A stretch of 63,072 nt of DNA, filler included, from Intoshia linei (GCA_001642005.1; 9 parts of 9 records of this genome joined end to end with filler, not necessarily neighbours in it); one strand, 5' to 3'; shown: positions 265 to 16,510, counted from the first letter of the whole stretch. Made by a program: numbers and translations. The notes: generated from the sequence alone by a model not told the origin.

Positions 265-357
265 GTGTAGTTGCTTCTCATGAAATACTCTCTAACATTG
301 ATAGGTCAGCTGTAGATAAATATACTGTCATTCAATTTTATATAATTTAGGGTATAC

Positions 358-3300
358 CTATCGAGTTTAAACAGGTTAGACAAATCATCACATGAGTCCC
401 CAATAAAATTGAAGTTATGATCTGTTTGCTTTGAATTTTTAATTTCAGGACAATTATCACAGACATCACCAACACCATCTCCATCTTGGTCTAATTGATC
501 TTTATTGGAATGATAAACACAATTATCCTGTGTGTTATTGATACCTGCAAAATTTAAATGAATATATTTAGAATGTGCTTATATTGAGTAATTTATAATG
601 ATGTTCCAATATCTATACTATCTTATAATATAAATCTATAATAACCATCATTATCGGCATCTTTATCACAAACATCACCAATATTGTCAGAATCAAAGTC
701 AGTATTAATAACTGACGCTTTGGAAGCACACTTGTCACAGACATTTCCAAAATAATCCTTGTCTTTGTTCTTTTGTAAAAAATTTGAAATAAAAATGCAA
801 TTATCCTAAATTTAATATAAAAAAGAAAAAGTATGCATTAATAGTATTTAAATTAATAAAACACACATAATTATTTAATATTCCATCATTATCTATATCA
901 TCATCGTCAACATCGCCAATTCCATCATTATCCGTGTCTTCTTGTCCAGAATTAGGGACATGAATGGCATTATCCTAAATAGTATTTGAAATGTAGAATT
1001 AATTTGCTTAGAAACTCATCAATATTATATATAATATATATAATATATTAACTAGGTTGAATGTTATCTACTTCGTACAAATAGCACTTGGCTCTGCCGA
1101 GGGTGAATTTTTTTAATTCTACCATAAAATAAATTCATATAATTTAAATAAAATTTAAAAAATGGACACTCTTAGAATTTAAAAAATTCAATTTCTAATA
1201 AAGTTTTTCGCAGGAGATGTTGATCTCTGTCAGTTTTCGAATTTGTAGTACAAACTTTTTGATACAAAGTCATTTTAAACTTTTTAAAAATGAAAAATTA
1301 CGTAGTAATGAAAAACCCGAAGGAATCAATTTATGAGATTTCAAACCATATCTCTTAATTGTAAATATAGAGATTGTTACATTCTCACTGTCACATCTCG
1401 TTACAGAGACGTTCAATTTAAATTTTTTTTGAAATTGTAAGATGATATTTACATTTTAATTTTTAATGTTAATCCAAACATTTAAAAAATATTGGTTGAT
1501 AATATATTAAAATTTATTTTTCACGAAGAATGCGTAGATTACTGGGGTTGAAATTTTGTATCTATATCAACTAGAATAAGCTGTATCATCTGTAATTTTG
1601 TTTAAAATTCTAGGACTATTTTTATTTTTTAAAAAAGGGTAATTTGGGGTTTTTGGCATTGAAGGACTCAATTTGAGAAAATGAAATTTTCGATAAAACA
1701 TCGCCGTCGAAAAACTGTATTATAAATGATTATTCTTACAACTATACCATTATATTATATATACATTATAACTATACATTATATATTAACATTTAATTTC
1801 TTATATATATGGTAACAGACAAATAAGTAAAAAACATACATTTTTAATTAACTTTATATAAGTAGGGATTATTATACCTTGAAACAAACTTTGTCCAGGA
1901 AACAAATTAAGTTATCATCAGGGATTTCATCTAAGTCACTGTCTTTACCACAATAAAATCCATCACCAGCAAATCCAACGTTACACTAAATACTAAGTAA
2001 ATATCTAAATTCGTGTAGTTACGTTGCACATAAATATTCCTGGACCACCATAAACACAAGTAGATTGAGAATGGCAAATTTTATTCGAAATACAAAAATT
2101 TTTTGGGACGCATTCTTTACATTCGTTAAAAATGTACCCTTCTTTGCATTTTAAACAGTTGAATCCACCCTACGATGTAGTTCATAAATTATAATTAACA
2201 ATTATAATCTAATAATAAATTGTAAGTAATTACTTCAAATGAAATTAATAATAATATTTATGCCTAATATTAATTTCTTTTCTATTTAATCAAAAAGTTA
2301 TCACCCTACTATACATATAAACCAGGGGTTGCTACACTTTTTTCACGGCGGACCGGTAATAAATTACAATATTTATCTCGGATCATCAAAGAGGAATTTC
2401 TAGGCAACATTAAAAAAATTTAAAAAAAAACATAATAAATTCACTTGTAATTGGTAAATATTTTTAACTGACCAGTCCTGGTCTGCTTACCGGTATTTGA
2501 AAAAATTTAATATAAACATTTCAAAATGTTTTGTTTTTTTAATTTTTCTTGTATAAATTTTAAATCAACACATTTAGTTTTCGAATATTTTTTAAAATTC
2601 TAATTTAAAATTAATAAATAAATTAATAATATTACAGGTTCGTTTTGACAGATAGTATAAGATGGGCAAGCGTTTACATCTTCTTTGCATTCATTAATAT
2701 CATTGCATTCTTGGTTCAATCCAAGTTGTTCAAGTTTGATAGTATTCCCATGCATGAAAATTCTACTTTGTTGGATATCTACGCCGTCTCTATAAGTCCC
2801 CCTATACCCATACGGGCATGCTAAACACTGGAATCCAGAGTTTCGATTAATACAACGATTGTTCCAGCATATGTTTGGAATTTTGCACTAAATGGTGTTA
2901 TTCAAAATTTTTAATTATAAAATGATGATTCATTACAACAATGTTTCTCAAACGGTGTGTCAGCGAAACACTAACTATAAACCTATTACTGAGAGAGAAG
3001 TTACATCAGATTTAAGAAATTATTTAAAAAAATAAAATTAACATTAATATTAATTAATATAAATAAAATAATAAAAAAATAATAGTAATAATATAAATCA
3101 GAGATTCCCACACTTTTTTCACGGCGGACCAGTAATAAATTATGAAATTTATCATAGACCATTAAAATAAAATTACTAGGCAACATTAAAAAAAATTTTA
3201 TAATTATTTCGCGGACCGTCATTTGATTTACTCTGATTTTATATTTTTTCTAAACCCTTCAGCGTAGTTGCATAAATACATTAACAACATACACAACATT

Positions 3301-6300
3301 TGCATCTCTTAATATTTGACATGTTCAAATACATCCATAAAATCAACCATTAAAATTAAAATTGTCTAAATATATTAAAAAGATAAAGCCATTTAATTAT
3401 CTTATTACCTATATCAAGGTGGTTCAAACAAATGGGGAGTGAGGGCCAAAAATTAATTTTACAACTTTTGCAGACCGCAACAGTAAAATTTAACATAATT
3501 AGTTCACCATCCCTTCACCCATACTGTTTTGTTCTTACTCCAACTGAAAAAATATTTTTTCCGGTTTTTTTACAATTTCATAGTAGTTAAAAATTTTTAA
3601 TTAGTACTACATGTATAATAAAATTCTAAATAAGATAAATAAATAACGATTGAAACTCTTGATTTGAACTACAAAAAATGTAAATACATGGAACCGGCAT
3701 TTTAAAATCTAGTATGAATACCTCGTCTATATCCACACATATTTGATTAATTGCATGCATTCCTATAGGACACTCAACACATTTTTTGTTGTAACTGTTA
3801 TATATTTGGCAACTACCATCATAACAAGGAAAATCGAGACAGGGACATTTTTTTTCAGCAGAATCAATGCAAAGGGTACATTTTGAGTCAGAATCGGTTT
3901 TAGTAAACGAACAATTTATAATTTCTCCATTATTACATATTATATCGCTACCACATTTTTTGCATGGTTTTGTACAACCTAGTAATGAATTACAATTGGT
4001 GTGAAAATTTAATGGACATATTTTGGCTCTTCCTTTTTGACAAAACTAAATTTGATTATACAAAATCTCTAGTAATTATACATATCCGTTCAAACAAGAA
4101 GTGCATTGACCATAACTTCCAAATGAATGTTCATACGAATCTTTAGTGCATGTAATATCACTACTACATCGTGCACATTCATTGATAGACCCATCACCAT
4201 GACAATAATACGTAGTCTCACATCTAATACATGTTTCTCTATCTACACAATTAAAATTAATAGACATAATTATGATAATACAATAATTCAGTTCCTCCAT
4301 TGAAATTCCAATGTAATCAAATCTAATACTAATTTCCTTTTCCCATTCAATAGGATAAATCAAAATTGTATCTGTAATGATGATTGGTTTAAAATCTATT
4401 TTTACGACGGTGGATTGATCAATATTGCCATTTAAAATGTTGGTAATGATATTATTTGACGTGAAATAATAAAATACAAACTCATTATCGATAGATTTCG
4501 TATTTCTGTAAGCAATCTTAAATTTAGTTACCCAGTATGGATTGTTTCCATTTCCTTGGATCAATAGAGCATGAAAATTGTATACATTCTTCAAAGAAAG
4601 TTTAATCCATTCTCCTGGATCAGATTTAAAGGGAACCCAACCAGAGCCGCTAAGTAGAATAGGATCTATTAATTCTGTATATGCATGTAAATTATAAATT
4701 TTAACCATAAGCTTCATTTAAACGTGATCTGGTTGCTTCATTTCTTTCTTTATTACTAGATGCTTTGATTTGTTTATCTAAAATCCAACCATGCTCCATT
4801 CCAATTTGTTTTATTTTTTCTATAACATTTTAAAAAAGTAAATACTGTCATATTATTAAAAGTGTGGAAAATTTTAAGTAATCGTTAAAATTATCTTTTT
4901 CACTTTTAGTAATAATAATTATTTACCATTTTGTAAATAATATCCGGGTGATAGAATGTTTATATAGCCAAAATTTTGATCAATATCGACTTTGAGAGGT
5001 ATTTCTTGGAAATTATGAGACAGTAAACATGTATTTCCCATGGAATATTCAACATCAAGTTTTGTAGCTAACGGTGGAGTGCCTTCATCAACACCTAGTA
5101 TTGTTACAATAACATTGGTTTTATCTCTTATTAAACTGTCATAATTTGTATCTGGATTATACTGCGTATTGATATTTGGACTAAATTTACAATTTGTTCA
5201 TTTATCTTTAAAAAGTTACACAGTATTTATGGCATGCAAATGAAACTTAGTTTTTTTATTTATTCCCTCATCTTTATCATCAATAGTAATTTTAGCAATG
5301 TAAGACAAGTCCAAAGACCTTCTACTCTTGGATACAACATTTTCATTATATTGAATCAGCATCGTAGGGCAATTGTCATTTGAATCTTGTATTTTAATCT
5401 AAAACAATATCATTGTAATATATTTTCTTTATTACTTGCACCAAAAAGATTCCAATTTTATTATTAACAGTACATTGTATATATAAATGTATATATTTAT
5501 GTGCCTCATAATCCAAATTATTTTTAATTATGACTCGAACATTGTTTATCGGAAAAGAAATGGATAATATTTCGAAACTTGTTTTGTCTATTGGTATTCC
5601 TCCAGTATAAATCCCGCTTTCACAAACTATAGTAAAATTATAAATATATTACAATTCAATACTATTCATTAGGGGTGTGAACAAATTTTTATATCAAAAG
5701 TGCATCCTTCCACAATATGAAAATTTTGAAAATATTCAATTTGCACCCAATCTTACCTCTCAACTGTTAAAAAAAACCGATTCCAATGAGAAAACTGAAT
5801 ATTTAAAAAAAAATATAAATTAAAAATTAATTGTTATGGAAATAATTATTACTATAAAATTTACTATACAAAATAAATTAAATTTTGCTCATTATTCATA
5901 TTTTGAAGTGCTTTGACCCAGAGTTTTTTTTAATCCTTTTTATATAATTTTTTGATAATTGTGTATCATTCAACCCCATCTTCCACGTATGGAGTGGAAC
6001 TTTTGTATTTTCGCAAAAAAGTGAAAAAATTCACACCCCTACTATTCATACTACATTTTTTATTATATATTCTATTTATGTATTAAGTCGTTCACTAGTG
6101 TTGTTTTTGAACAAATTTAAAATGTACTATTTGGTTATCAGTCTTAATTACATTCTAAAATACTCAACACTGTTTTTCACGATTTTTTCTAAATGAACAA
6201 TATCAGCGTTTCCCAAACCAAAGAAACTGTCAGCGAAATAATTTTGAAAGAATTTTTACTAATTACAAGTCCATTTATTATGCTTTTTATTAAAATCCAA

Positions 6301-9300
6301 CCATTTTTACTAAAGATCATAAATATCAAAAACCTAAAATTGGATTTTTCATTTTATGATTGGTAAAATAGGAATTTTCCCTAAAGGGTTATAAAATTTT
6401 GATTTTTAGTAAAAATGGTTAATTAGGCGCCCATTTTTTAGTGCTCAATGTGGAAACATTATGCCATCATTTTACAAGAATTTCGTCAAGTCCCCAACGA
6501 GGAGTCTCAGGGTACAGTAGTTTCGACACTGGGTTGAGCAATGCATCAACTTTAAAAAAATTCGATCAATGATAAAAAATTTATTAAAATCAGAAATTGC
6601 GAAATTTGCGAAAAGAAGGAATCAATTTATTTCAGTCAAAAACTTTCAGTAAACTGAAACCATATTTCTGCATTACAATTTGTAATTTGCAAATACAATT
6701 TTGAACGTTCCATTTTATTTTTTATTTATTATTTCAAAATTTTGAAAAATATTGGTGTATAATATAAAATACACTATCAGTCATTTATAGCGTATATTGA
6801 AATTTTTTCTCTAGGTCATTGATTCCCAACCTGTGGGTATTTACCGAAGAGTGGATAATTGGATATTTTTCATAGGTAATCGCGAAATTAGTATAAAAAT
6901 TAAGAATTTTTTTTATTTTTTTTTGCGTCTAATGCACACTGCAAAATATATATATAATTGAATGTTTATGTGTGTGTCACAGTTTATTTAAAAAACTAAA
7001 AGTCGTAATTTAATAAAACCAATTTCTAATACAGTTTTTCGCATGTCATGTTTACATCTAGTTATATTTCCCTATATTGAATCCTTCAGCGGCATAAACC
7101 CAATTTGCCATTTTTTACTAATAAAATAAAAATAATAAAATAAAATAATTAAACCAAAAATTAAAAATAACCTACATTCTTGGAAAGTTATTAAAATCAT
7201 AAGCATTATCATGAATCGCAACCTTCAAAAAGTGCATTTTCAAATAAAAACTCCAGATTACCCTTTTTTTAAAAAATTAAAATAGTCCAAGAATTTTTAA
7301 AAATATTACAGTTGATCCAGCTGTATCCAGTTAACACACACAAAAAATTTCAATCGACAAAGTGAAGCCTTCACGGTTAAAAAATCATTTTAGTATTAAT
7401 TTTTTTTATTTTAAACTATTTTATCATTATCAAAAAAGAACATTTTATTGTATGTGAAAAAAATTAAAATGTTTTATATTTTATCTTAAGCCGACATGTC
7501 GCGACAGTCTCAGAAAGTTAAAAACACAAATTCTAATTAAATTTATTTCTGGTACAGCGAGTAAGATATATTTCACTCTCAGAAATTTGCATCTTTACCG
7601 GCAAAAACAAAATTTACTCCCGTTTTTTAAAAATGAAAATTTAAATATTCTTCCTACAATGTCAAAAAAATCAGGAATTATTTTAAAAAATGTGTTAAAC
7701 ATGAAGGTATAAATTGTTCAATTTGATATTTATTTTATTTTATACACCGGAAAAAACGGACGTAGGAGTTTTGTTTTTGAAATGTCAGGTATTGTAAGTT
7801 TTTTAAAGAGATTGTTACACAGATTACACAGATTGTTACAGACAGACATACATTTTTGGCAACTTTTACTATATAACTATTAATATATTATACTATTAAT
7901 ATTATTAAATGTATAATAAGGATATGCATCAATTTTAAATATTACTTATAACGTCCTTATTTGCGTCTTTAATAAATACAAAGTTGGTCGGAATGTTTTT
8001 CTTGGATTTTTTGATTAATTCGTGTAATGTATTGTCATCTTGTTTTATGTCAAATACATTTTCTTCGTTACCTAATATAATATAAATTATTCATGTTTTT
8101 TTATTTTTTGAATGTTAAACAAAAATACACAATGTGATTACCCGATAAAAATGAAATTTTATAAATATCATTCCTCGACGGTTTGTATTGATCAATTACC
8201 GAAATGGAGTCAGTAACGCCATAATTTTTACCCACATTTTCATCCAATGTGGAACAATTTATCAAACCTCCATCTCCATTTATATTTAGTATTTTTTCGT
8301 TCAAAATAATATTTCTAGTTTCTAATAAAAACACACTTTTATTCCATTTATATCGATTAATGACGAATATTTCAAACTTGTAGTAGCAGTTGGACTAAAT
8401 TTAAAAATTTAAATATTTTAAATTTTTTTTTCTAAAAATTGAAATGAAGCAATTACTGTTAATCCTAAATTTATTATTTTTAAGGTATTTTCATCAACTA
8501 CGCATTTTCCACTGGATATACTTCCATATTTTACTTTCACTGAATCTAAACACAATTTTATCTCGACAATTCGCAATTTTATAGTTCGTAAATTCTCTAT
8601 ATCGACATAAATAATTTGGAAAATATATCTTTATTGAGAGTGGACCAAGGCATGAAAATCTACCAATACAAATGGATAGTATTTAGTGATTTTTCTATGA
8701 TAGAATTTTATCTATTATGCCAAAATTACAATTAGGTCGATTACAAAATGGCGAACAGAGATAGAATATTTGAATTTTACATTACTTAAAAAAACCTGAT
8801 GTACTAATATTAACATTGATGCATTCATCAAATTGGTTTTTATTCAAATAAGCGAGTTTCTTTCCGTGTATGAAAAATAAAAGTTCATCTCCACCTCCAA
8901 TTTCAAAAGTCCCCAAATTATTATAAAGGAAATATCCATACAACTTTACTGTAAATCTATATTATTATTAATGGTTTATTAGTAAATCATGCTAATAATA
9001 TAATTATTTAATTTAATTTAAATTAATTAGTTTATACCCAAAATTACGAAATTTGCCATCAAATGCCATTTGATTTTCGTGTTTATATCCAATCCCATCA
9101 ATAATAAAAAAATTTTCACTGTAATATCTAAAATAAATTAAAATGTTATATCACGTATTATAAATTTAGTAATATTTTACCGATTATAATTGAGAGTATT
9201 AAATTTTAAATTCAAAATTTGATTATTTAATTCAAAATTTAAATTTTCTTCCTTTCTGAACCAATAATCTTGTATTAAATGTTTCGATCGAACGTAGGAA

Positions 9301-12300
9301 TGAAACACATTTTGTTTATAATCAACAGTATCAACATTTTGAACTAAATTGTATTCATTCGAATTGTCACCATTTCCACTAAATTGGTAATAGGATTTGC
9401 TAAAATCGTGTATATATAACGGTAATAGGTAGTCTTTATCATTTGATTTTGTTTCATCAACTAGAAATTTTGAAAATGTATTATTATTTTATCTAAATAT
9501 TATAATAATTATTTATTAAGCTAGCGTGATTGATTTGAAACAACAGTTATTCTTTTTAGGAGTAAATTTCTATTTATGTATTTTTACACACTTACAACCA
9601 GATTTTTAAATTAAAATTTAAATTTAAATTTTTAAAGACCCTTTTTTTAAAAAATAAAAATTATCCTATAATTTTATCAAAAATAAATTCTAGGATAGTT
9701 TTTAAAATCATAATTTTAAAGAAGTGTATTTTTACCATCAAAACCACAAATTACCCTTTTTTTAAAAAATGAAAATTGTCCAAAAATTAAAAATAAAATT
9801 ACTACTTATACAGTGATCTCTTGTTAACACACACAAAATTTTTTAATCTTACAAAGTGATGCCTTGACGCTCAATAAAGCACTTTGGATTTTATTTTTTT
9901 TTTTTGATTTGATAACTATTTAAAACAAAAAAATTTTAAATAATTCATGGCTCTAGAATTTAAATAAAAATTATTCTTATTCCGCTATTTTTCATCTAAT
10001 TTAACTAATGTTGAATAAACTGTATCAGACTAATTTTTTTACAAAATTTTGGGTAATTGTGATTTTTGGCTTTAATATAAAAATTTCAGATAATAAAATT
10101 TACGAAACTGTATTGATTTAAAACATTATTAGAATTCTTAAAGTGTTTTTTAAAATTCTACGAATTTTATTACTATTTTCATTTTTCAAGAAAAAGGGGT
10201 AATTGGGGATTTGACCGTGGAGATGTAAAATTTCTGACATGAAATTTAAAATGATACAACTGATTTGAACTTTATATTTTAATTTCAATAAATAAGACAT
10301 TTTTTGAATATTTGAGTAATTAAAGCAATTTTTGTGACAATTATAAGATTTTACAATATGTTATCTATAATAATTAACTATACCATATTTTAAATTTGGC
10401 GTAATGATAAAAACAGGAAAACTTGAAACACTACTGTATTTATCAAGATCTAATTTTAGTCTACATGTATATTGTACAGCCGGTATCACATTTATGTTGA
10501 ATTCTACATAAATGAAATTTTTCGAGTAATTATCATGAATAATTTTTTCTAAAATTATTTGATTTTTAGCTAAACAAGTTGCAGTGTATTTTCTAAAAAG
10601 TATATAAACAAAATTTAAAAAAAAAAACCTAGAAAAAGTATAAAGTGGGCTGTTACTGGGAGAGTTTGGGAAAATTAAATCATCATTTTTCCATTTCAAT
10701 ATAATTGTTCCTATTTCCACTTTTTCTATTGATAAATCAAGTCCATTACACAAAAATTGAGAGGCATATAAATTGAATAGTTTGGGCTCAGTAGTTGATA
10801 CAATTTTTTTAGAATATTCTTGACATTTCAAATTTACATCTTTATAATTCTGAAAGATTTGTTACTGTATTCAAAAATAAAATTGAATAAAATAAAATAC
10901 ATTAAAATTGAATATACAAAATGTAAATATAATGTACCTGAAATGTTTGATATAAGGCACAGTCACATTGAATTTTATTATTTTTCAAATCAAACTTTTT
11001 AATTTTAGAGGGTAGTCCATTAGGATAAAAGGATATAATTTTATTATTATTTAACTGTAGCGAGTTTAAATTTTTTATAAAATTGATATTTGGTAAATAT
11101 TCTATTGCATTGTATTCAAAGTTTAAAGATTTAAGTGAATTTAAACCATTAAACGCATTTTGATGTAGAAAAGTAATTTGATTATGAGATAAATCAAGTG
11201 AATTTAAATTTTTTAATTCTTTAAACGAAAATTCGTCAATAAAAGAAATTCGATTATTTTCCAAATATAAATTTAAAATGTTAGAATGAATCAATGGATT
11301 AAACGTAGATTGAATGATTTTTGAAATATGATTTTCATTCAGATATAAATTTTCCACATGGACATTATACATGGATACTTTTGGTATGCGCCACAGATAG
11401 TTTTTGTTTAAATATATTGACTTGACTTTTAGTTCCCCAAAGCATAAATTACATAAATAATTCAATTCGTTATTATTAAATGTCAATTTATTTGTTATTT
11501 TTGACATGTCGTTGAATATCGGTGTTTGTATACTTTTTAAGTTGTTATTATCCAAAAATCTAAAATTAGTATATTACCGAACATAGTAGTATCAAACAAA
11601 TTTTTAACAACAATATTATCAAAAACGTTGTTTTCAATTTTTTGGATTTTATTATAACTCAAATCCAATTGTTTTTCAATTTTTGAATTTTTAAATGCAA
11701 ATTGTTTGATTTTGTCAATTTTCAGATTCTTCAAATTTAATAATCTATTAATTCATTATTATTTTCATGATTATTGTATAATTACTTTAAAATTGAATTT
11801 TCAAATGCAGACTCATATATTGAATTTAATGGATTGTTTTTTAAAATAATTGTATCTACTTTTATGTTGTAGAATGCTCTTTTTCCTATTGTGTATATTT
11901 GGTTATCATTTAAATTTCTAATTTTTTTTTTATTTAAAAAAATTTGTATTTTTACATATTTGAACATTGAATATTTTTGAATGCTTCTTGGGTGACATCT
12001 TGGATGTAATTAAAAGATAAATCTATGTCATTTTTAACAATTATTCCATTTAACATGTTTGGATAGATTTTTTGCAATTTATTGTTGTTAAATTTCCTAT
12101 TAAAATTAATTGATTATTATGTACTATACTGGCATATCACACACAACAAATTTACCGCATACACGAATAAATTAAAAAAAAGTGAAAGTTTGACTAAATA
12201 TATATATATATATATACTTTGGGAAACTTAACCATCTTTTTTACGTTGCGCCATGCAACCAAATTCTTAACAGAATCCGTGCTTCAGAATCAAATATTCG

Positions 12301-15300
12301 AGCGAATTAGTTTAAATCAGGTAATATATTAATTTATATATTATTTTTTATGTATTCCTGAATATAATTAAACTAATCCCACATTATATATATTTTTTTA
12401 TATATAATTTGAATGTTTTCTCATCTGTCTGTTACCATTATAGTCAAAAACTAAAAATCGTACAATTCTACAAATAACAACTTATTTTTTTTCAACGACA
12501 GTTTTTTTCTGTGAGTAAAACGAGCTAAATTTTAATTTTACATCTTCACCGCCTAAAAAGTATATTAACATTTAAAATAAATTATTTTTATAATTTTGAA
12601 AGTGATAAATTAACTTCTGTATTCACATATTAAAATATAACTTAATTATAAATGGATAAATATAATATTACACGGTTTGTGTTGATTTTACATGTGCGAA
12701 TGTATTAATGTTGATATATTGCAAATTGTTGAAAGAAAAATCTATAGTATTTGATAGAGGTGAATCCATAAATCTGTAAAATTGTATTTATTTTAACTGC
12801 ATATATAATATAAGAGTAAAGTATACAACACCCGTCTGATACCAATAATAATACAATCTATATAATTTAACTAAATGCATTAATATCAATCAATCCGAAA
12901 AGTTTCTGACTTTTATCAAAAATTATTTTTGGTTAATCTGCGATTAATATTCAAAATACTAAGAATTATAAAAAATCAAATTATTAGAATAGAGTCTACG
13001 AAATAAATTTTTTATCAAATGTTATGATGTTGTATTACTCTGTCACCCATCAATTAACCATAATAAATTACGCCTTTGGTGGAATTTCTGACATCAAATT
13101 ATTTTTAAATATTCTAAGAATACATTTAATAGATTGAAATAATTTCTTAATTAATTAATAATTAATTAAATAATTGTAATTCTATAGTAAAATTAAGATA
13201 ATTACATTATTTTTAATTTTAAACAACCACGAAAAGCCAAATCAGGAATTGTGGTGATTTGATTTGAATCAACATTTAAAGTTTCCAATTTATTCAAAAA
13301 CTAGAATTAAAATGAACATAAATTTACATATACTGAATATCATATATACAAGAGGCATCTAATTCATTTTGCCGTTCGGGTTAATCACTTAAGAAAACAC
13401 TTAATCCAATCAATGAAAATTTTAAAATTACAATCAGAAATAGAGAGAGCCTCCATTATTTGCCAATAATTTTTGAAAATGATAATTGATTTAATTCAGA
13501 ACTCATTATAGTATTTATAATAAACATGTAAACATATTAACACGCAAGTACAAAACAAGTGGTTCTCACAATTTCTTTGTAATGCTTTCTTGACCGTGAA
13601 GGCGTCACTTTGTCAGATTGAAAATTTTTGTGTGTATTCACTGTATATAACTGTGTCTGCATAATTTATTTAAAACTCTAGGATTATTTTTATTTTTTAA
13701 AAAAGGGGCAATCTGGATTATTCAATTTTTTCATTTTAAGGGGTGTTTCCTAGAAATTTTTTTTTTAATCAAACTTTCAAGTTAGGGGTTTAAGATTTTT
13801 TTTGAACTTTTGATTTTTTTTAAAATGTTAAAAAACACAAATTCTAATATAGTTTGTCGAGGCTCATACAGTATTAATTTTTGAATTTAAAAATCTTAGA
13901 GTTTTTTCCTTCTAAAAATCTCTCGAAAAATTGTTAAAAATGAAAACTGAGAATCATACAATTTTATAAATATCATATCTATACTGATAATTGCATTTCA
14001 ATCTCAAAAATTAACCTCTTGGCGTTTTTATATTAATATTAATTATATTAACGAAATTTAACATTTTTAAAAAAACAGCAACAAATGAATGCAAGATTCT
14101 AATATTGAAATTAATTATAATGCCAATAATTCATAAACTTTCATATAATTTGTGTTTTTTATAATTCTATGCTTCTTACTTATTAAAATAAATGTTTACA
14201 AAAAAACAGACACATTTTTAGCTGTATTTTGTATTTTAATATATAATGTAGTAATGTATTTGAATATTATTGTGTACTTTACATCTATTCATAAATATAA
14301 TCTACTGATTAACCTGGAATGCATTTTCGTCATGAAATGTATACAAATTATTAGCCATTAATCTAAAATTAATATTAAATATATTTAAAAACGAATAAAC
14401 TGCGTTCCAAGTTATTATGCAACGATTAAAAACATTAATAATTAAAAAAGTAGTCACTTAATTCTATTAATTTTTTCATCATAATTTAATCATTGATCAT
14501 ATAAAACTTTAATGTCACAAAAAAATTTATCACGTTTCCAAAAAAGCATTATATTTAACATTTTATATTTTTGGGTAATTTTTATTTTTATTTAATTATA
14601 TTAAAAACGGTTGGTAAAGTCAGGCAAGCTAAAGGTAAACCAGGAAGGATTTAACCAAAAGACACATTGAATTACGACTATCCTGGGCTAAAAATTACAT
14701 AAAGATTAATTTTTCAAATGTAATTTTTACCGATGAAACCAGAATATCTTTAGATGGGCCAGGTTCGTGGAGTAAGGGTTGATTAGTATATAACAGATAA
14801 CCACCAAACCGTTGAAGGCGGTATCAATAAGGTGGGAGCATAATGATTTGGGCAGGCATTGTGAAAGACACTATTATTGGATATTAAAAAATATACAGTG
14901 AGAATATACAATATCAATCAAAAATGATCTCTGGCATGAAATTTTCAAAGAAATCAAAACAATCACTGAAAAAACAATTGAAAACATCATGAAATCCATG
15001 GATAAAAAACTTTTTCTTGTAATATCCCGGAAAGGGGTATATTAATATGTAAAATTTAATTACATTTTTTTTGCTTGAATTTGGTTTAAAATAAAATGGA
15101 TTATATTATTTAAATATTTTTAAAAATTTATTTATTCGTATTAACAAGAAATTATTGTTTAATATTCATTTGCATAATAATTTGGCACACCAAAAATCAC
15201 AAAATTTTCCTAAATCTTTGTGTATTCATTTTTTTTGAATACATTACATTTTTCTTGGGACTTTAAAGTATTATTAGTTAAATATATAAATATGATAAAA

Positions 15301-15902
15301 AAATTAACCAAATTTAATAACTCCTATTTAATTGATTAATGTTTTTAATGTTTACATAATATCTTGGAACGCAGTGTATATTAGTTATTTCACCAACCCG
15401 AAGGGTGACTTCTCAAGATTTAAAATAGCTCTAAATTGGAGTTTTCCCAAAAACACGTATCTAAATTTTGCACAAAGGGACTGAACGTGTTTATCCGATC
15501 CTACACGCTATCACTAATCGGAAAACTATTATTATCCTATTAATTAAAATTTTTGTCAATTTTCTTAGTCTAATGAAAACCTGTTGAAATCTGTGTTTTT
15601 TTTCCCATTTTATGCATACTCAGTTAAATATATTAAAAATATTACATTGTTTGAAGTGATTTTGGAAGTGCATCATTATCAATGCCTACCAATCGATTTG
15701 AGGACAAATTTCTACAAATATTAATATTTGATAATTAAAATTGAGACAAAATTACAGTTCTTTCAATGTTATTAATTTTTTGAAATCATCTTGATTTACA
15801 TGTGTTATTGTGTTACCGGCCAAATTAAGATTTATCAATTTTTTTAAATCAGAATATATAAATACTTTTGGAATCAAAGTCAGCTTATTATATTCGAGTT
15901 TT
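358..15902 (-). CDS. Giant multi-exon extracellular matrix protein of the thrombospondin superfamily (mega-thrombospondin-like): LRRs - FN3 - fibro-slime/PA14 - cadherin - F5/8C - EGF - TSP type-3; incomplete at both ends
   Basis: LRR exons at 15756-15902, 15646-15711 ([16 protein letters not shown]), 13206-13300, ~11960-12096 and ~10940-11920. FN3-like 10385-10830. PA14-like 8310-9460. Cadherin-like ~5000-5400 (QDSNDNCP). F5/8C ~4300-4820 ([16 protein letters not shown]; WVTKFKIAY). EGF/Ca-EGF 1880-4045 (CNDINEC). TSP3 repeats 358-975 ([27 protein letters not shown]). GT-AG boundaries are frame-compatible where checked. Confidence 0.85.
1130..1830. repeat. Copy of the modular AT-rich foldback-like repeat family
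   Basis: Shares modules (AGAATTTAAAAA..CAATTTCTAAT..TTTTTCGC; AAAAAAGGGTAATTTGGGGTTTTTG; AATGCGTAGAT..TGGGGTTGAAATTTTG) with copies at 6945, 9520, 13560, 29488 and 41112. Confidence 0.7.
5670..6041. mobile_element. hAT-type MITE
   Basis: TIR TAGGGGTGTGAA...TTCACACCCCTA with a perfect 8-bp target-site duplication CTATTCAT (5662-5669 and 6042-6049). Confidence 0.9.
6945..7880. repeat. Copy of the foldback-like repeat family with inverted ends
   Basis: Left end ATATATAATTGAATGTTTATGTGTGTGTCAC; right end GTTACAGACAGACATACATT...ACTATATAA in inverted orientation; shared internal modules. Confidence 0.7.
9520..10350. repeat. Copy of the foldback-like repeat family
   Basis: The CAAATTACCCTTTTTT module occurs forward (~9747) and inverted (~10190-10210); also carries the ACACACAAAATT..CAAAGTGA.GCCTT module. 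Confidence 0.65.
13560..14030. repeat. Partial copy of the foldback-like repeat family
   Basis: TGACCGTGAAGGCGTCACTTTGTC..TTGAAAATTTTTGTGTGT is the reverse complement of the module at ~7335-7380. Confidence 0.6.
14398..15376 (+). mobile_element. Internally deleted Tc1-like element in a thrombospondin intron
   Basis: TIRs ACTGCGTTCCAAG.TATTATG / CATAATATCTTGGAACGCAGTG followed by TA. Decayed transposase motifs [17 protein letters not shown] and [10 protein letters not shown]. Confidence 0.85.
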
Positions 15903-16510
15903 CTAAATTTAACAATATTAACATATGAACCAGCGCTTCTCAAGTGAGGTCACTGGGCCTTGAAATTATAAGTCCGGTAGATTATTTTAATGTAATAATA
16001 TATTTAATTCATTATACATTATGTATTTACTTTGATAGTTACGTCTATTTATTGATTTCTATTACTTTAAAATTATTATACATATTATAAAAAAAAAATT
16101 AATAATGTGAACATCTCTAGTCAGTTCAATAATTCACGATTTTTCAGATATCCATTGTTGGTGAAGCTTAACTTTCACTATACAGTATTGGCCATATAAT
16201 TATAATAATTCATAAAAAATTGTAAATATGGTTATATTTTTTGTTATTTTAACATTAGATTATAATATAAAGCATATATAGAAAGCTGAATTTTCATTCA
16301 TTTAGAAAATGCATTGTTAAGCATTAAAACATTAATCCAACACATAATTAATTCTAATTCAAATCAGCATCCAAAATATTGCGTATTTAGATTAACACTA
16401 TAGAGAGACGAAAATATCAACTTCTCTTTGTTATTCACGTAATCGGTGCTAATATCGTTTTAATATAAATCCTATCATTGTTATAGTTCTGCACGTTTAT
16501 TTTTATTTTT

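What the first reader, a model, noticed from the sequence alone, without database searches (positions are those of the whole stretch)
8310..9460. Fibro-slime-type PA14 domain hidden in five small exons of an animal mega-thrombospondin-like gene
Seen: exons 9182-9460, 9038-9127, 8796-8956, ~8458-8525 and ~8310-8395, largely absent from the ORF track, splice to [10 protein letters not shown]...QDYWFRK..N...[14 protein letters not shown]...[15 protein letters not shown]...[19 protein letters not shown]...[16 protein letters not shown]. Known: this motif order (xRDF, WF, FFPID.GF, HNF.FT, F.F.GDDDVWVFINGKL, Y.F.FF.ER) typifies the fibro-slime PA14 subfamily of Dictyostelium psi-factor-like and Fibrobacter/myxobacterial proteins. 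Inference: a module best known from slime moulds and bacteria is built into an animal matrix protein between FN3 and cadherin domains. Its GDDD acidic motif has become GGDE, which may alter Ca2+/sugar binding. I cannot tell whether this has been described before.
Basis: partly seen in the sequence, partly recalled or inferred. Interest (0 to 1): 0.8.

Follow-up and report, generated by a model that had tools for sequence, protein, structure and literature searches.

The report
PA14-type domain in orthonectid mega-thrombospondin
Five small exons of the already catalogued mega-thrombospondin gene of the parasite Intoshia linei encode a divergent "fibro-slime"-type PA14 beta-sandwich domain, and the same domain is in every cnidarian and bilaterian mega-thrombospondin examined but scores below the cut-offs of the standard domain libraries.

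Summary

- **Gene identity:** the contig is Intoshia linei (Orthonectida). The gene is NCBI A3Q56_05607, a partial 1860-aa protein, listed as the Intoshia mega-thrombospondin "IlMT" by Shoemark et al. 2019.
- **Curated cut-offs not reached:** TIGR02148 Fibro_Slime scores 23 bits against a cut-off of 45. Pfam PA14 gives no hit.
- **Homology is nonetheless firm:**
  - All five exons match, in order, a profile of the same segment from 25 other mega-TSPs.
  - That segment's profile matches a bacterial fibro-slime profile over the whole domain (hhalign 99.9%, E 2e-33). Intoshia alone scores 93%, E 3e-7.
  - An AlphaFold model of an orthologous segment has PA14 structures as 9 of its 10 best PDB neighbours, nearly the same list as a bona fide fibro-slime protein.
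- **GGGDE motif:** replacement of GDDD by GGG[DE][DE] is family-wide, not special to Intoshia.
- **Prior literature:** PA14 was already noted in the Hydra mega-TSP.

This is a new member of a known kind. The useful extra is that the domain is a general, under-annotated part of mega-TSPs. Ligand binding is inferred, not shown.

The parts
9181..9460 (-). Domain exon 1. It carries the N-terminal strand motif (..LPLYIHDFS..) and the WFR motif.
   Evidence: Translation. Acceptor ..TTTCTAG, donor GTAAAA. Matches mega-TSP segment profile positions 11-92, E 1.2e-4. 100% identical to P0001 residues 645-736.
9038..9127 (-). Domain exon 2. It carries the FFxxDGxG[YF] motif and the first residues of the (H/R)NFGFT motif.
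   Evidence: Translation. Introns of 53 and 81 nt, both GT..AG. Profile positions 103-135, E 6.4e-8.
8796..8956 (-). Domain exon 3, the core strands. It has GGGDE in the place of the fibro-slime GDDD.
   Evidence: Translation. On its own it hits GLEYA PF10528 at E 0.045 and TIGR02148 at E 0.04. Six-frame TIGR02148 scores 17.7 bits at 8761-8964. Profile positions 133-189, E 1e-5.
8457..8596 (-). Domain exon 4, the animal-specific insertion loop with the second loop cysteine. The NCBI model starts it at 8596. An in-frame acceptor at 8547-8546 would start it at 8545.
   Evidence: Both acceptors are AG and in frame. The 17 extra residues of the annotated version are an insertion relative to all 25 orthologues. 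The profile match starts exactly at the codon spanning the nearer acceptor. Undecided without RNA data.
8142..8394 (-). Domain exon 5. It holds the last strands of the domain (..[18 protein letters not shown], to about 8295) and then the linker towards the cadherin-like region.
   Evidence: Open frame 8394-8104. Profile positions 230-259, E 5e-3. Aligned to the fibro-slime Y.lDlFhAERht..SnFr.eT block.
10364..10861 (-). FN3-like exon directly upstream of the domain.
   Evidence: Open frame. No Pfam hit in Intoshia. Orthologues have weak fn3 hits at the equivalent place, E 0.02-0.13.
10905..15949 (-). N-terminal leucine-rich-repeat exons of the same gene. They run to the piece's edge.
   Evidence: LRR_8 E 1.5e-20 on one exon. 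LRR_8 E 4e-44 and LRR_5 E 2e-27 on P0001.
4922..5648 (-). Cadherin-like region downstream of the domain.
   Evidence: DSNDNCP motif in open frame 5398-5219. No Pfam Cadherin hit in P0001. Cadherin hits at the equivalent place in orthologues.
4079..4717 (-). Discoidin (F5/8 type C) domain and the start of the cysteine-rich region.
   Evidence: PF00754 E 4e-12.
309..974 (-). Thrombospondin type 3 repeats. The gene runs off the left edge of the contig.
   Evidence: TSP_3 E 1.2e-13 on P0001. Open frames with DxDxDGxGDxCD motifs.

Best explanation
Window positions 9460 to about 8295 (minus strand, five exons) encode residues ~655-897 of the Intoshia linei mega-thrombospondin. This is a divergent PA14-fold beta-sandwich of the fibro-slime type. 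It sits between an FN3-like domain and the cadherin-like region of a secreted matrix protein, whose order is LRRs, FN3, this domain, cadherin, discoidin, Cys-rich/EGF, TSP type 3 repeats.

Shown here:
- The exons and their splice signals.
- Homology to the same segment in mega-TSPs of corals, annelid, bivalves, echinoderms, a hemichordate and amphioxus.
- Homology of that segment to bacterial fibro-slime domains over their whole length.
- The PA14 fold of an orthologous segment.
- An animal-specific insertion of about 20-25 residues carrying an invariant cysteine pair.
- GGG[DE][DE] in place of GDDD.

Inferred:
- The domain was in the mega-TSP of the cnidarian-bilaterian ancestor and is inherited, not recently transferred.
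- Like other extracellular PA14 domains, it is a ligand-binding module. The ligand is most likely a glycan, possibly bound with Ca2+ at the acidic pair.
- The Intoshia copy is a fast-evolving version that may have relaxed or changed that binding. It keeps 26 of 47 near-invariant positions and has lost one cysteine pair.
For: - **Exons and splice sites:**
- **The public spliced model includes all five exons:**
- **Exon-by-exon colinear matches** to an Intoshia-free family profile.
- **Similarity to orthologues:** phmmer of P0001 640-905 hits 26 of the 27 mega-TSPs searched at residues ~500-1450, E 1e-10 to 1e-21 (P0032 too at full-sequence E 0.07; only P0015 fails). The alignment shows shared YYDFS, WFR, FFPVDGxG, HNFGFT, GGGDELWxYxN and YxFDxFHxER blocks.
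- **TIGR02148 hits:** E 7.5e-5 on P0001 and E 3e-10, 4e-9 and 4e-8 on Owenia, amphioxus and Montipora.
- **Link to a certified fibro-slime protein:** the P0010 segment finds P0124 at E 5.7e-6 against 5.8 billion proteins. P0124 scores 104.8 bits on TIGR02148 and 24.2 bits on PF07691.
- **Custom profile of 41 bacterial fibro-slime domains:** 59-91 bits on mega-TSPs, 35.5 bits on P0001.
- **hhalign:** 99.9%, E 2.3e-33, 195 columns. Against P0001 alone: 93.3%, E 2.8e-7.
- **Protein-language-model neighbours** of P0001 650-900 are PA14 clusters, score 0.89 with 184 shared features.
- **Structure:** the AF2 model of the orthologous segment has pLDDT 80 and pTM 0.83. Its best PDB neighbours are PA14 domains: Cea1A Z 9.3, 6qe7 8.4, RTX adhesin PA14 8.1, KmBglI 7.9, GH31 7.4, MpPA14 6.9, 7pjj 6.8, Epa6A 6.6, Flo5A 6.5. 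The model of P0124 returns nearly the same list.
- **Tree:** the 26 animal segments, Intoshia included, separate from 25 bacterial ones at 100/100 support.
Against: - No curated model reaches its cut-off. TIGR02148 gives 23 bits (orthologues 29-40) against 45. PF07691 gives no hit at all, even at E 10 on the orthologous segment.
- Foldseek against the PDB gave nothing at E <= 1e-3 and mixed legume lectins with PA14 domains.
- VIA Z scores of 7-9 are in the range the tool calls middling.
- The fold was predicted for an orthologue, not for the Intoshia sequence.
- No RNA evidence for the junctions was available.
- Nothing here tests ligand binding.
- The Intoshia copy is very divergent (branch length 2.47 against a median of 0.22). 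It has Asn for the conserved Glu of the ER motif and Leu for the Trp after GGGDE.
Confidence: 0.85

Rival explanations
1. The segment is a PA14-fold domain that has lost ligand binding and serves only as a rigid spacer or packing module between the FN3 and cadherin domains.
For: The GDDD motif is replaced by GGG[DE][DE] across the family and by SGGEG in one orthologue. Intoshia has also changed the conserved ER and Trp positions. No binding data exist.
Against: About 47 near-invariant columns are kept from corals to amphioxus, including an acidic pair at the motif in 25 of 26 sequences. That is more than a spacer would need.
Confidence: 0.3
2. The segment is a legume-lectin or ConA-like jelly roll, not PA14, and the fibro-slime resemblance comes from convergent motifs.
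For: The best Foldseek rows are legume lectins (E 1.3e-3, TM ~0.3).
Against: The profile-profile match to fibro-slime domains covers the whole length at E 2e-33. An exhaustive structural alignment puts PA14 domains in 9 of the 10 best places, and legume-lectin domains only at Z about 5. A certified fibro-slime protein gives nearly the same neighbour list.
Confidence: 0.03
3. The exons are a gene-model artefact: decayed or unexpressed pieces that are not spliced into the mega-TSP mRNA.
For: No transcript data were examined. The exon 4 boundary is ambiguous. The copy is highly divergent.
Against: All five pieces are open, have canonical GT..AG borders and compatible phases, and keep the order, strand and spacing of the orthologous domain. 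The NCBI model joins them. The invariant loop cysteines and most core motifs are retained.
Confidence: 0.05
4. The domain entered Intoshia recently by horizontal transfer from a bacterium or a slime mould.
For: The closest non-animal relatives found are myxobacterial proteins.
Against: The same domain lies at the same place in mega-TSPs of cnidarians, spiralians and deuterostomes. It is split by four spliceosomal introns. It shares the animal-only insertion with its cysteine pair. It falls on the animal side of a 100/100 split.
Confidence: 0.01

Closest known systems
Fibro-slime domain (NCBIfam TIGR02148), as in myxobacterial, Fibrobacter and Dictyostelium secreted proteins
   Same: The order of conserved blocks is the same over about 200 aligned columns: [Y/R]DF..(H)xDF, W[FY]R, FFP[IV]DGxGFG, HNFxFT, G-acidic-LWV[FY]IN, G..Y.fD[IL]FHAER...S.F..ET. 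hhalign gives 99.9%. The predicted structural neighbours are the same.
   Different: It scores below the model's cut-off and matches only positions 2-42 of 90. GDDD is replaced by GGG[DE][DE]. The DLGG.H...IDLD stretch is replaced by a longer loop with two invariant cysteines. It is embedded in a giant animal matrix protein and split by introns.
PA14 domain annotated in the Hydra magnipapillata mega-TSP (Shoemark et al. 2019, PMC6526912)
   Same: Same protein family and same central region. The paper lists this very Intoshia protein as a mega-TSP.
   Different: The paper reports PA14 (InterPro IPR011658) only for Hydra, as an extra, and lists FN3, discoidin and Cys-rich domains for bilaterians. 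Here the domain is found in all cnidarian and bilaterian mega-TSPs examined, and it is specifically of the fibro-slime type.
Lectin-type PA14 domains of adhesins (Flo5A, Epa1/6, Cea1A, Marinomonas MpPA14, RTX adhesin PA14)
   Same: These are the best structural neighbours, Z 6.5-9.3 over 140-152 residues. They are also extracellular and adhesive in context.
   Different: Sequence identity is only 6-12%, and there is no Pfam PA14 hit. Those lectins bind sugar through Ca2+ held by a cis Asp-Asp pair (my knowledge of the Flo5/Epa/MpPA14 structures). I infer, but did not test, that the D-E or E-E pair of mega-TSPs lies at that site.

Membership tests
NCBIfam TIGR02148 Fibro_Slime | Whole-protein score at or above the curated cut-off of 45 bits | tested here: not met
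   P0001 scores 23.1 bits, E 7.5e-5. Exon 3 alone scores 14.4 bits. Orthologues score 29.3-40.3 bits. The positive control P0124 scores 104.8 bits.
NCBIfam TIGR02148 Fibro_Slime | Homology over the full fibro-slime domain, with the same order of conserved blocks | tested here: met
   hhalign of the family profile against a bacterial fibro-slime profile gives 99.9%, E 2.3e-33, 195 columns. The fibro-slime profile against P0001 alone gives 93.3%, E 2.8e-7. The custom fibro-slime HMM scores 35.5 bits on P0001.
Pfam PA14 (PF07691) | Score at or above the gathering cut-off of 24 bits | tested here: not met
   No hit in the six-frame search of the genome, in P0001 at E <= 0.1, in three orthologues at E <= 1, or in the orthologous segment at E <= 10. 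The bacterial fibro-slime control only just passes at 24.2 bits.
PA14 fold | Beta-sandwich whose nearest solved structures are PA14 domains | tested here: met
   Tested on the orthologous segment of P0010, not on Intoshia. Nine of the ten best PDB representatives are PA14 domains, Z 6.5-9.3. The model of P0124 gives nearly the same list. Foldseek alone was inconclusive.
Lectin-type PA14 | Ca2+-binding cis Asp-Asp pair and a sugar-binding second loop | tested here: inconclusive
   The motif reads GGGDE in Intoshia, and D-E, E-E or D-D in 25 of 26 family members. Residue-level equivalence to the lectin site could not be checked, and no solved fibro-slime structure was found by sequence.
Mega-thrombospondin (Shoemark et al. 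2019) | Long N-terminal LRR region | tested here: met
   LRR_8 E 4e-44 and LRR_5 E 2e-27 on P0001.
Mega-thrombospondin (Shoemark et al. 2019) | Central cadherin domain(s) | tested here: inconclusive
   No Pfam Cadherin hit in P0001. A DSNDNCP motif lies at the orthologous place. Orthologues do hit Cadherin.
Mega-thrombospondin (Shoemark et al. 2019) | EGF, TSP type 3 repeats and TSP C-terminal domain | tested here: inconclusive
   TSP_3 at E 1e-13 and EGF_3 are present. The contig ends inside the type 3 repeats, so TSP_C cannot be seen here. TSP_C exons lie on contigs C898 and C2241. P0001 residues 1000-1860 are 31-34% identical to full-length mega-TSPs, E down to 5e-143. The paper lists the protein as IlMT.

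The most novel reading that the evidence does not exclude
A fibro-slime-type PA14 domain is an ancestral and universal part of eumetazoan mega-thrombospondins that the domain libraries miss. It carries its own disulfide-stapled insertion and a Gly-rich acidic motif. It is the same module that myxobacteria and dictyostelids, two other lineages with aggregative multicellularity, use in secreted proteins, and it acts as the Ca2+/glycan-binding site of the mega-TSP.
Probability: 0.3. Interest if true: 0.5.

Novelty: new member of a known kind. Interest (0 to 1): 0.35.

Why it matters
Mega-thrombospondins are among the oldest animal matrix proteins, and the Hydra one is needed for head regeneration (PMC6526912). 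Their central region has been described as variable, with PA14 noted only in Hydra.

This work shows that a PA14 domain of the fibro-slime type sits at a fixed place in every cnidarian and bilaterian mega-TSP examined. That gives the family one more conserved candidate ligand-binding module, and it gives annotators a profile that finds it. For Intoshia itself, the finding only adds a domain call to a gene that was already catalogued.

Tried and rejected
- **Pfam PA14** gave no hit on the genome in six frames, on P0001, on three orthologues, or on the orthologous segment.
- **phmmer of exon 1 against 1.84 billion representatives** returned only the gene's own product and three proteins (P0002-P0004) with scattered short hits. 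None has a PA14-type Pfam hit, and I judge them spurious.
- **Word-index search of P0001 640-905** found only itself. The segment is too divergent for shared 5-mers.
- **Sequence searches of the PDB** found nothing meaningful, either with the orthologous segment or with the bacterial fibro-slime profile.
- **Foldseek against the PDB** was ambiguous. The exhaustive VIA search was needed.
- **The joined step was left out.** I did not splice the exons into a peptide. The Intoshia exons were searched one by one by reference, and the only joined sequence used is NCBI's own model P0001 as returned by the tools.
- **The Intoshia segment itself was not folded.** No intron-free reference of at most 1200 residues exists for it. 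The orthologous transcript segment L003:3603-4385 was folded instead.
- **Not retrieved:** The domain tree therefore has only bacterial outgroups.
- **The contig is not human.**
Full report
**What is in the window.** The piece is 25% G+C. On its minus strand it carries one long, intron-rich gene. Stop-to-stop open frames show leucine-rich repeats from ~15949 to ~10905, an FN3-like exon, the exons of the finding, a cadherin-like stretch with a DSNDNCP motif, a discoidin domain, cysteine-rich and EGF exons, and thrombospondin type 3 repeats that run off the left edge. The window is contig C3495 of a 41.6-Mb assembly. The contig is not human.

**The observation.** I read the borders on the sequence and checked them by script.

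| Exon | Coordinates | Note |
|---|---|---|
| 1 | 9181-9460 | reader gave 9182 |
| 2 | 9038-9127 | exact |
| 3 | 8796-8956 | exact |
| 4 | 8457-8545 or 8457-8596 | two in-frame acceptors |
| 5 | 8394 to the donor near 8141 | domain ends near 8295 |

Every intron begins GT and ends AG. Intron lengths are 53, 81, 199 or 250, and 62 nt.

**Identity of the gene.** A phmmer search of exon 1 against 1.84 billion representative proteins returned one true hit, P0001 (1860 aa), identical over residues 645-736. Its source name is 'hypothetical protein A3Q56_05607, partial [Intoshia linei]'. Shoemark et al. 2019 (PMC6526912) list Intoshia linei OAF66671.1, partial, 1,860 aa, as the orthonectid mega-thrombospondin IlMT. 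I match that entry to P0001 by organism and length only. P0001 carries LRR_8, LRR_5, F5_F8_type_C, EGF_3 and TSP_3. Its residues 1000-1860 are 31-34% identical to 2,200-3,000-aa proteins of scallop, pearl oyster, mussel, Owenia, sea stars, sea urchins, crinoids, an acorn worm, amphioxus and corals, with E down to 5e-143.

- Exon 3 alone gives GLEYA (a PA14-clan family) at E 0.045 and TIGR02148 Fibro_Slime at E 0.04.
- The six-frame genome search gives 17.7 bits at 8761-8964.
- On NCBI's own spliced model P0001, TIGR02148 reaches 23.1 bits (E 7.5e-5) for residues 764-801. That is still under the cut-off of 45 and covers only positions 2-39 of the model.
- Pfam PA14 gives nothing.

By curated thresholds, the segment is a member of neither family.

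**The segment is conserved in other mega-TSPs.** None of the orthologues carries PF07691 in its precomputed Pfam list. Yet phmmer of P0001 640-905 hits 26 of the 27 searched (E 1e-10 to 1e-21), each at one place just after its LRR and FN3 region. One of the other two (P0032) still gives a marginal full-sequence hit at E 0.07. The alignment shows blocks shared from corals to amphioxus: YYDFS..DF, WFR, RY.s.FFPVDG.G[FY]..EgQRDC, HNFGFT.AIR, GGGDELW.Y.N, a loop with two cysteines, and Y.FD.FH.ER..C.S.f.E. A profile built from the 25 non-Intoshia sequences was run against all 1095 open frames of the window and of a paralogous locus. It picks the five exons as the five best window hits, colinear with the profile. 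Owenia, amphioxus and Montipora proteins hit TIGR02148 at E 3e-10, 4e-9 and 4e-8, again under the cut-off and only over the first half of the model.

**Link to bona fide fibro-slime domains.** One orthologue, P0010, comes from an intron-free transcript assembly (L003). Its segment could therefore be given by reference (L003:3603-4385).
- The only short relative of this segment in 5.8 billion proteins is P0124 (E 5.7e-6). P0124 is a 322-aa secreted-type protein that scores 104.8 bits on TIGR02148 and 24.2 bits on Pfam PA14.
- Relatives of P0124 are mostly Polyangia, Sorangium and other myxobacteria.
- A profile of 41 such bacterial domains scores 59-91 bits on the mega-TSPs. On P0001 it scores 35.5 bits, in two colinear stretches at 691-800 and 862-894.
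- Profile against profile, the mega-TSP segment and the bacterial domain align over 195 columns at 99.9% probability, E 2.3e-33.
- The bacterial profile against P0001 alone gives 93.3%, E 2.8e-7, over residues 708-894.
- Protein-language-model neighbours of P0001 650-900 are PA14 clusters from Planctomycetota, Fibrobacterota and Myxococcota, score 0.89 with 184 shared features.

**Fold.** The P0010 segment was folded with the 27-row alignment A1 and gives pLDDT 80.4 and pTM 0.83, an all-beta domain. Foldseek against the PDB was weak and mixed legume lectins with PA14 domains. The exhaustive VIA search of 48,161 representatives gave these ten best entries:

| PDB entry | Z |
|---|---|
| Cea1A (5a3l) | 9.3 |
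| anti-sigma-factor-associated domain (6qe7) | 8.4 |
| RTX adhesin PA14 (6m8m) | 8.1 |
| KmBglI (3abz) | 7.9 |
| GH31 xylosidase (2xvg) | 7.4 |
| MpPA14 (6x95) | 6.9 |
| BcpE2 (7pjj) | 6.8 |
| a GH2 enzyme (6ncw) | 6.7 |
| Epa6A (4cou) | 6.6 |
| Flo5A (4ahw) | 6.5 |

To my knowledge, nine of the ten contain PA14 domains. These Z values are only middling, so I ran a control. The model of the certified fibro-slime protein P0124 returns nearly the same list with similar Z. No intron-free reference exists for the Intoshia sequence, so I did not fold it.

**What is particular to the animal version.**
- The GDDD of fibro-slime proteins reads GGGDE in Intoshia. It reads GGG[DE][DE] or a close variant in 25 of 26 sequences (GGGDD in bivalves, SGGEE in corals, SGGEG in P0010).
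- Where bacteria have DLGG.H....IDLD, the animal proteins have a longer loop with two cysteines that are invariant in all 26.
- A second cysteine pair, in QRDC and ER..C, is present in 24 sequences. It is lost together in Intoshia and in one Montipora protein, which is what a disulfide would predict.
- Intoshia keeps 26 of 47 near-invariant columns. It has Asn for the Glu of ER and Leu for the Trp after GGGDE.
- Its branch in the domain tree is 2.47 against a median of 0.22, with deviant composition.

**Origin.** In a tree of 26 animal and 25 bacterial domains, the two groups separate at 100/100 support, with Intoshia on the animal side. The domain also has a fixed position in the protein, four introns and the shared animal insertion. 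Together these exclude a recent transfer into Intoshia. The domain was most likely in the mega-TSP of the cnidarian-bilaterian ancestor. Whether it came earlier by descent or by an old transfer cannot be said without protist sequences, which I could not fetch.

**Gene-model detail.** NCBI's exon 4 starts at 8596. Its first 17 residues form an insertion relative to every orthologue. The profile match begins exactly at the codon that spans the alternative acceptor at 8547-8546.

**How it most likely works.** Shown: this is a PA14-fold, fibro-slime-type domain in the extracellular part of a matrix protein. Inferred: it is a binding module. Solved PA14 domains of adhesins bind sugars through Ca2+ held by an acidic pair (my knowledge of the Flo5, Epa and MpPA14 structures), and the acidic pair is kept across the family. 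I put Ca2+-assisted glycan or matrix-ligand binding at about one half, and a purely structural role at about one third. In Intoshia the function may be relaxed.

[quoted passage not shown] No other paper in the library links PA14 with thrombospondins. All 'fibro-slime' papers concern Fibrobacter and other microbes.

**Verdict.** This is a new member of a known kind. The modest added point is that the domain is general to mega-TSPs and is of the fibro-slime type.

Noticed in passing
G000:C2241 (L084 501-800, 1296-1391, 1549-1815, 2655-2900; TSP_C at C2241:14774-15870): This is a second Intoshia gene with the same domain (motif GGGNE). It lies about 9 kb upstream of TSP_C exons on the same strand, so it is probably a second mega-TSP paralogue. 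Its core exon matches the family profile much better (56.9 bits) than the window's copy does (20.8 + 28 bits). It appears to lack the intron that separates exons 2 and 3 in the window.
   Followed up: partly
G000:C898:6469-7151 (minus strand): TSP_C exons on a third contig. They could be the missing 3' end of the window's gene, which is cut inside the type 3 repeats, or they could belong to a separate thrombospondin.
   Followed up: no
window 8546-8596: The NCBI model extends exon 4 by 17 codons that have no counterpart in any orthologue. An in-frame AG acceptor at 8547-8546 would remove them.
   Followed up: partly
window 1548-1654, 7237-7355, 9617-9684, 9730-9848, 13662-13727: A dispersed repeat of roughly 60-120 nt (72-84% identity, both orientations) sits in several introns of the gene, including two copies in the long intron just upstream of domain exon 1. 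It is probably a small interspersed element of this genome.
   Followed up: no
window 2315-2421 and 3091-3197: Two copies of a 107-nt direct repeat (81% identity) lie in neighbouring introns of the EGF region. Both contain a similar short open frame (..REKSV..).
   Followed up: no
window 14395-14529 and 15245-15379: A 135-nt inverted repeat (71% complementary) lies within the LRR part of the gene, with arms 715 nt apart.
   Followed up: no
alignment (P0001 and P0051): The cysteines of QRDC and ER..C are lost together in Intoshia (Phe, Trp) and in one Montipora mega-TSP (Gly, Trp). All 24 others keep both, which points to a disulfide between them.
   Followed up: partly
NCBIfam hits on P0001 and orthologues: The type 3 repeat region of animal mega-TSPs hits the myxobacterial 'cell-cell cohesion MYXO-CTERM protein MtsC' model at E 1e-30 to 1e-60 (below its cut-off). 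Two modules of this animal matrix protein therefore have their nearest prokaryotic relatives in myxobacteria.
   Followed up: no
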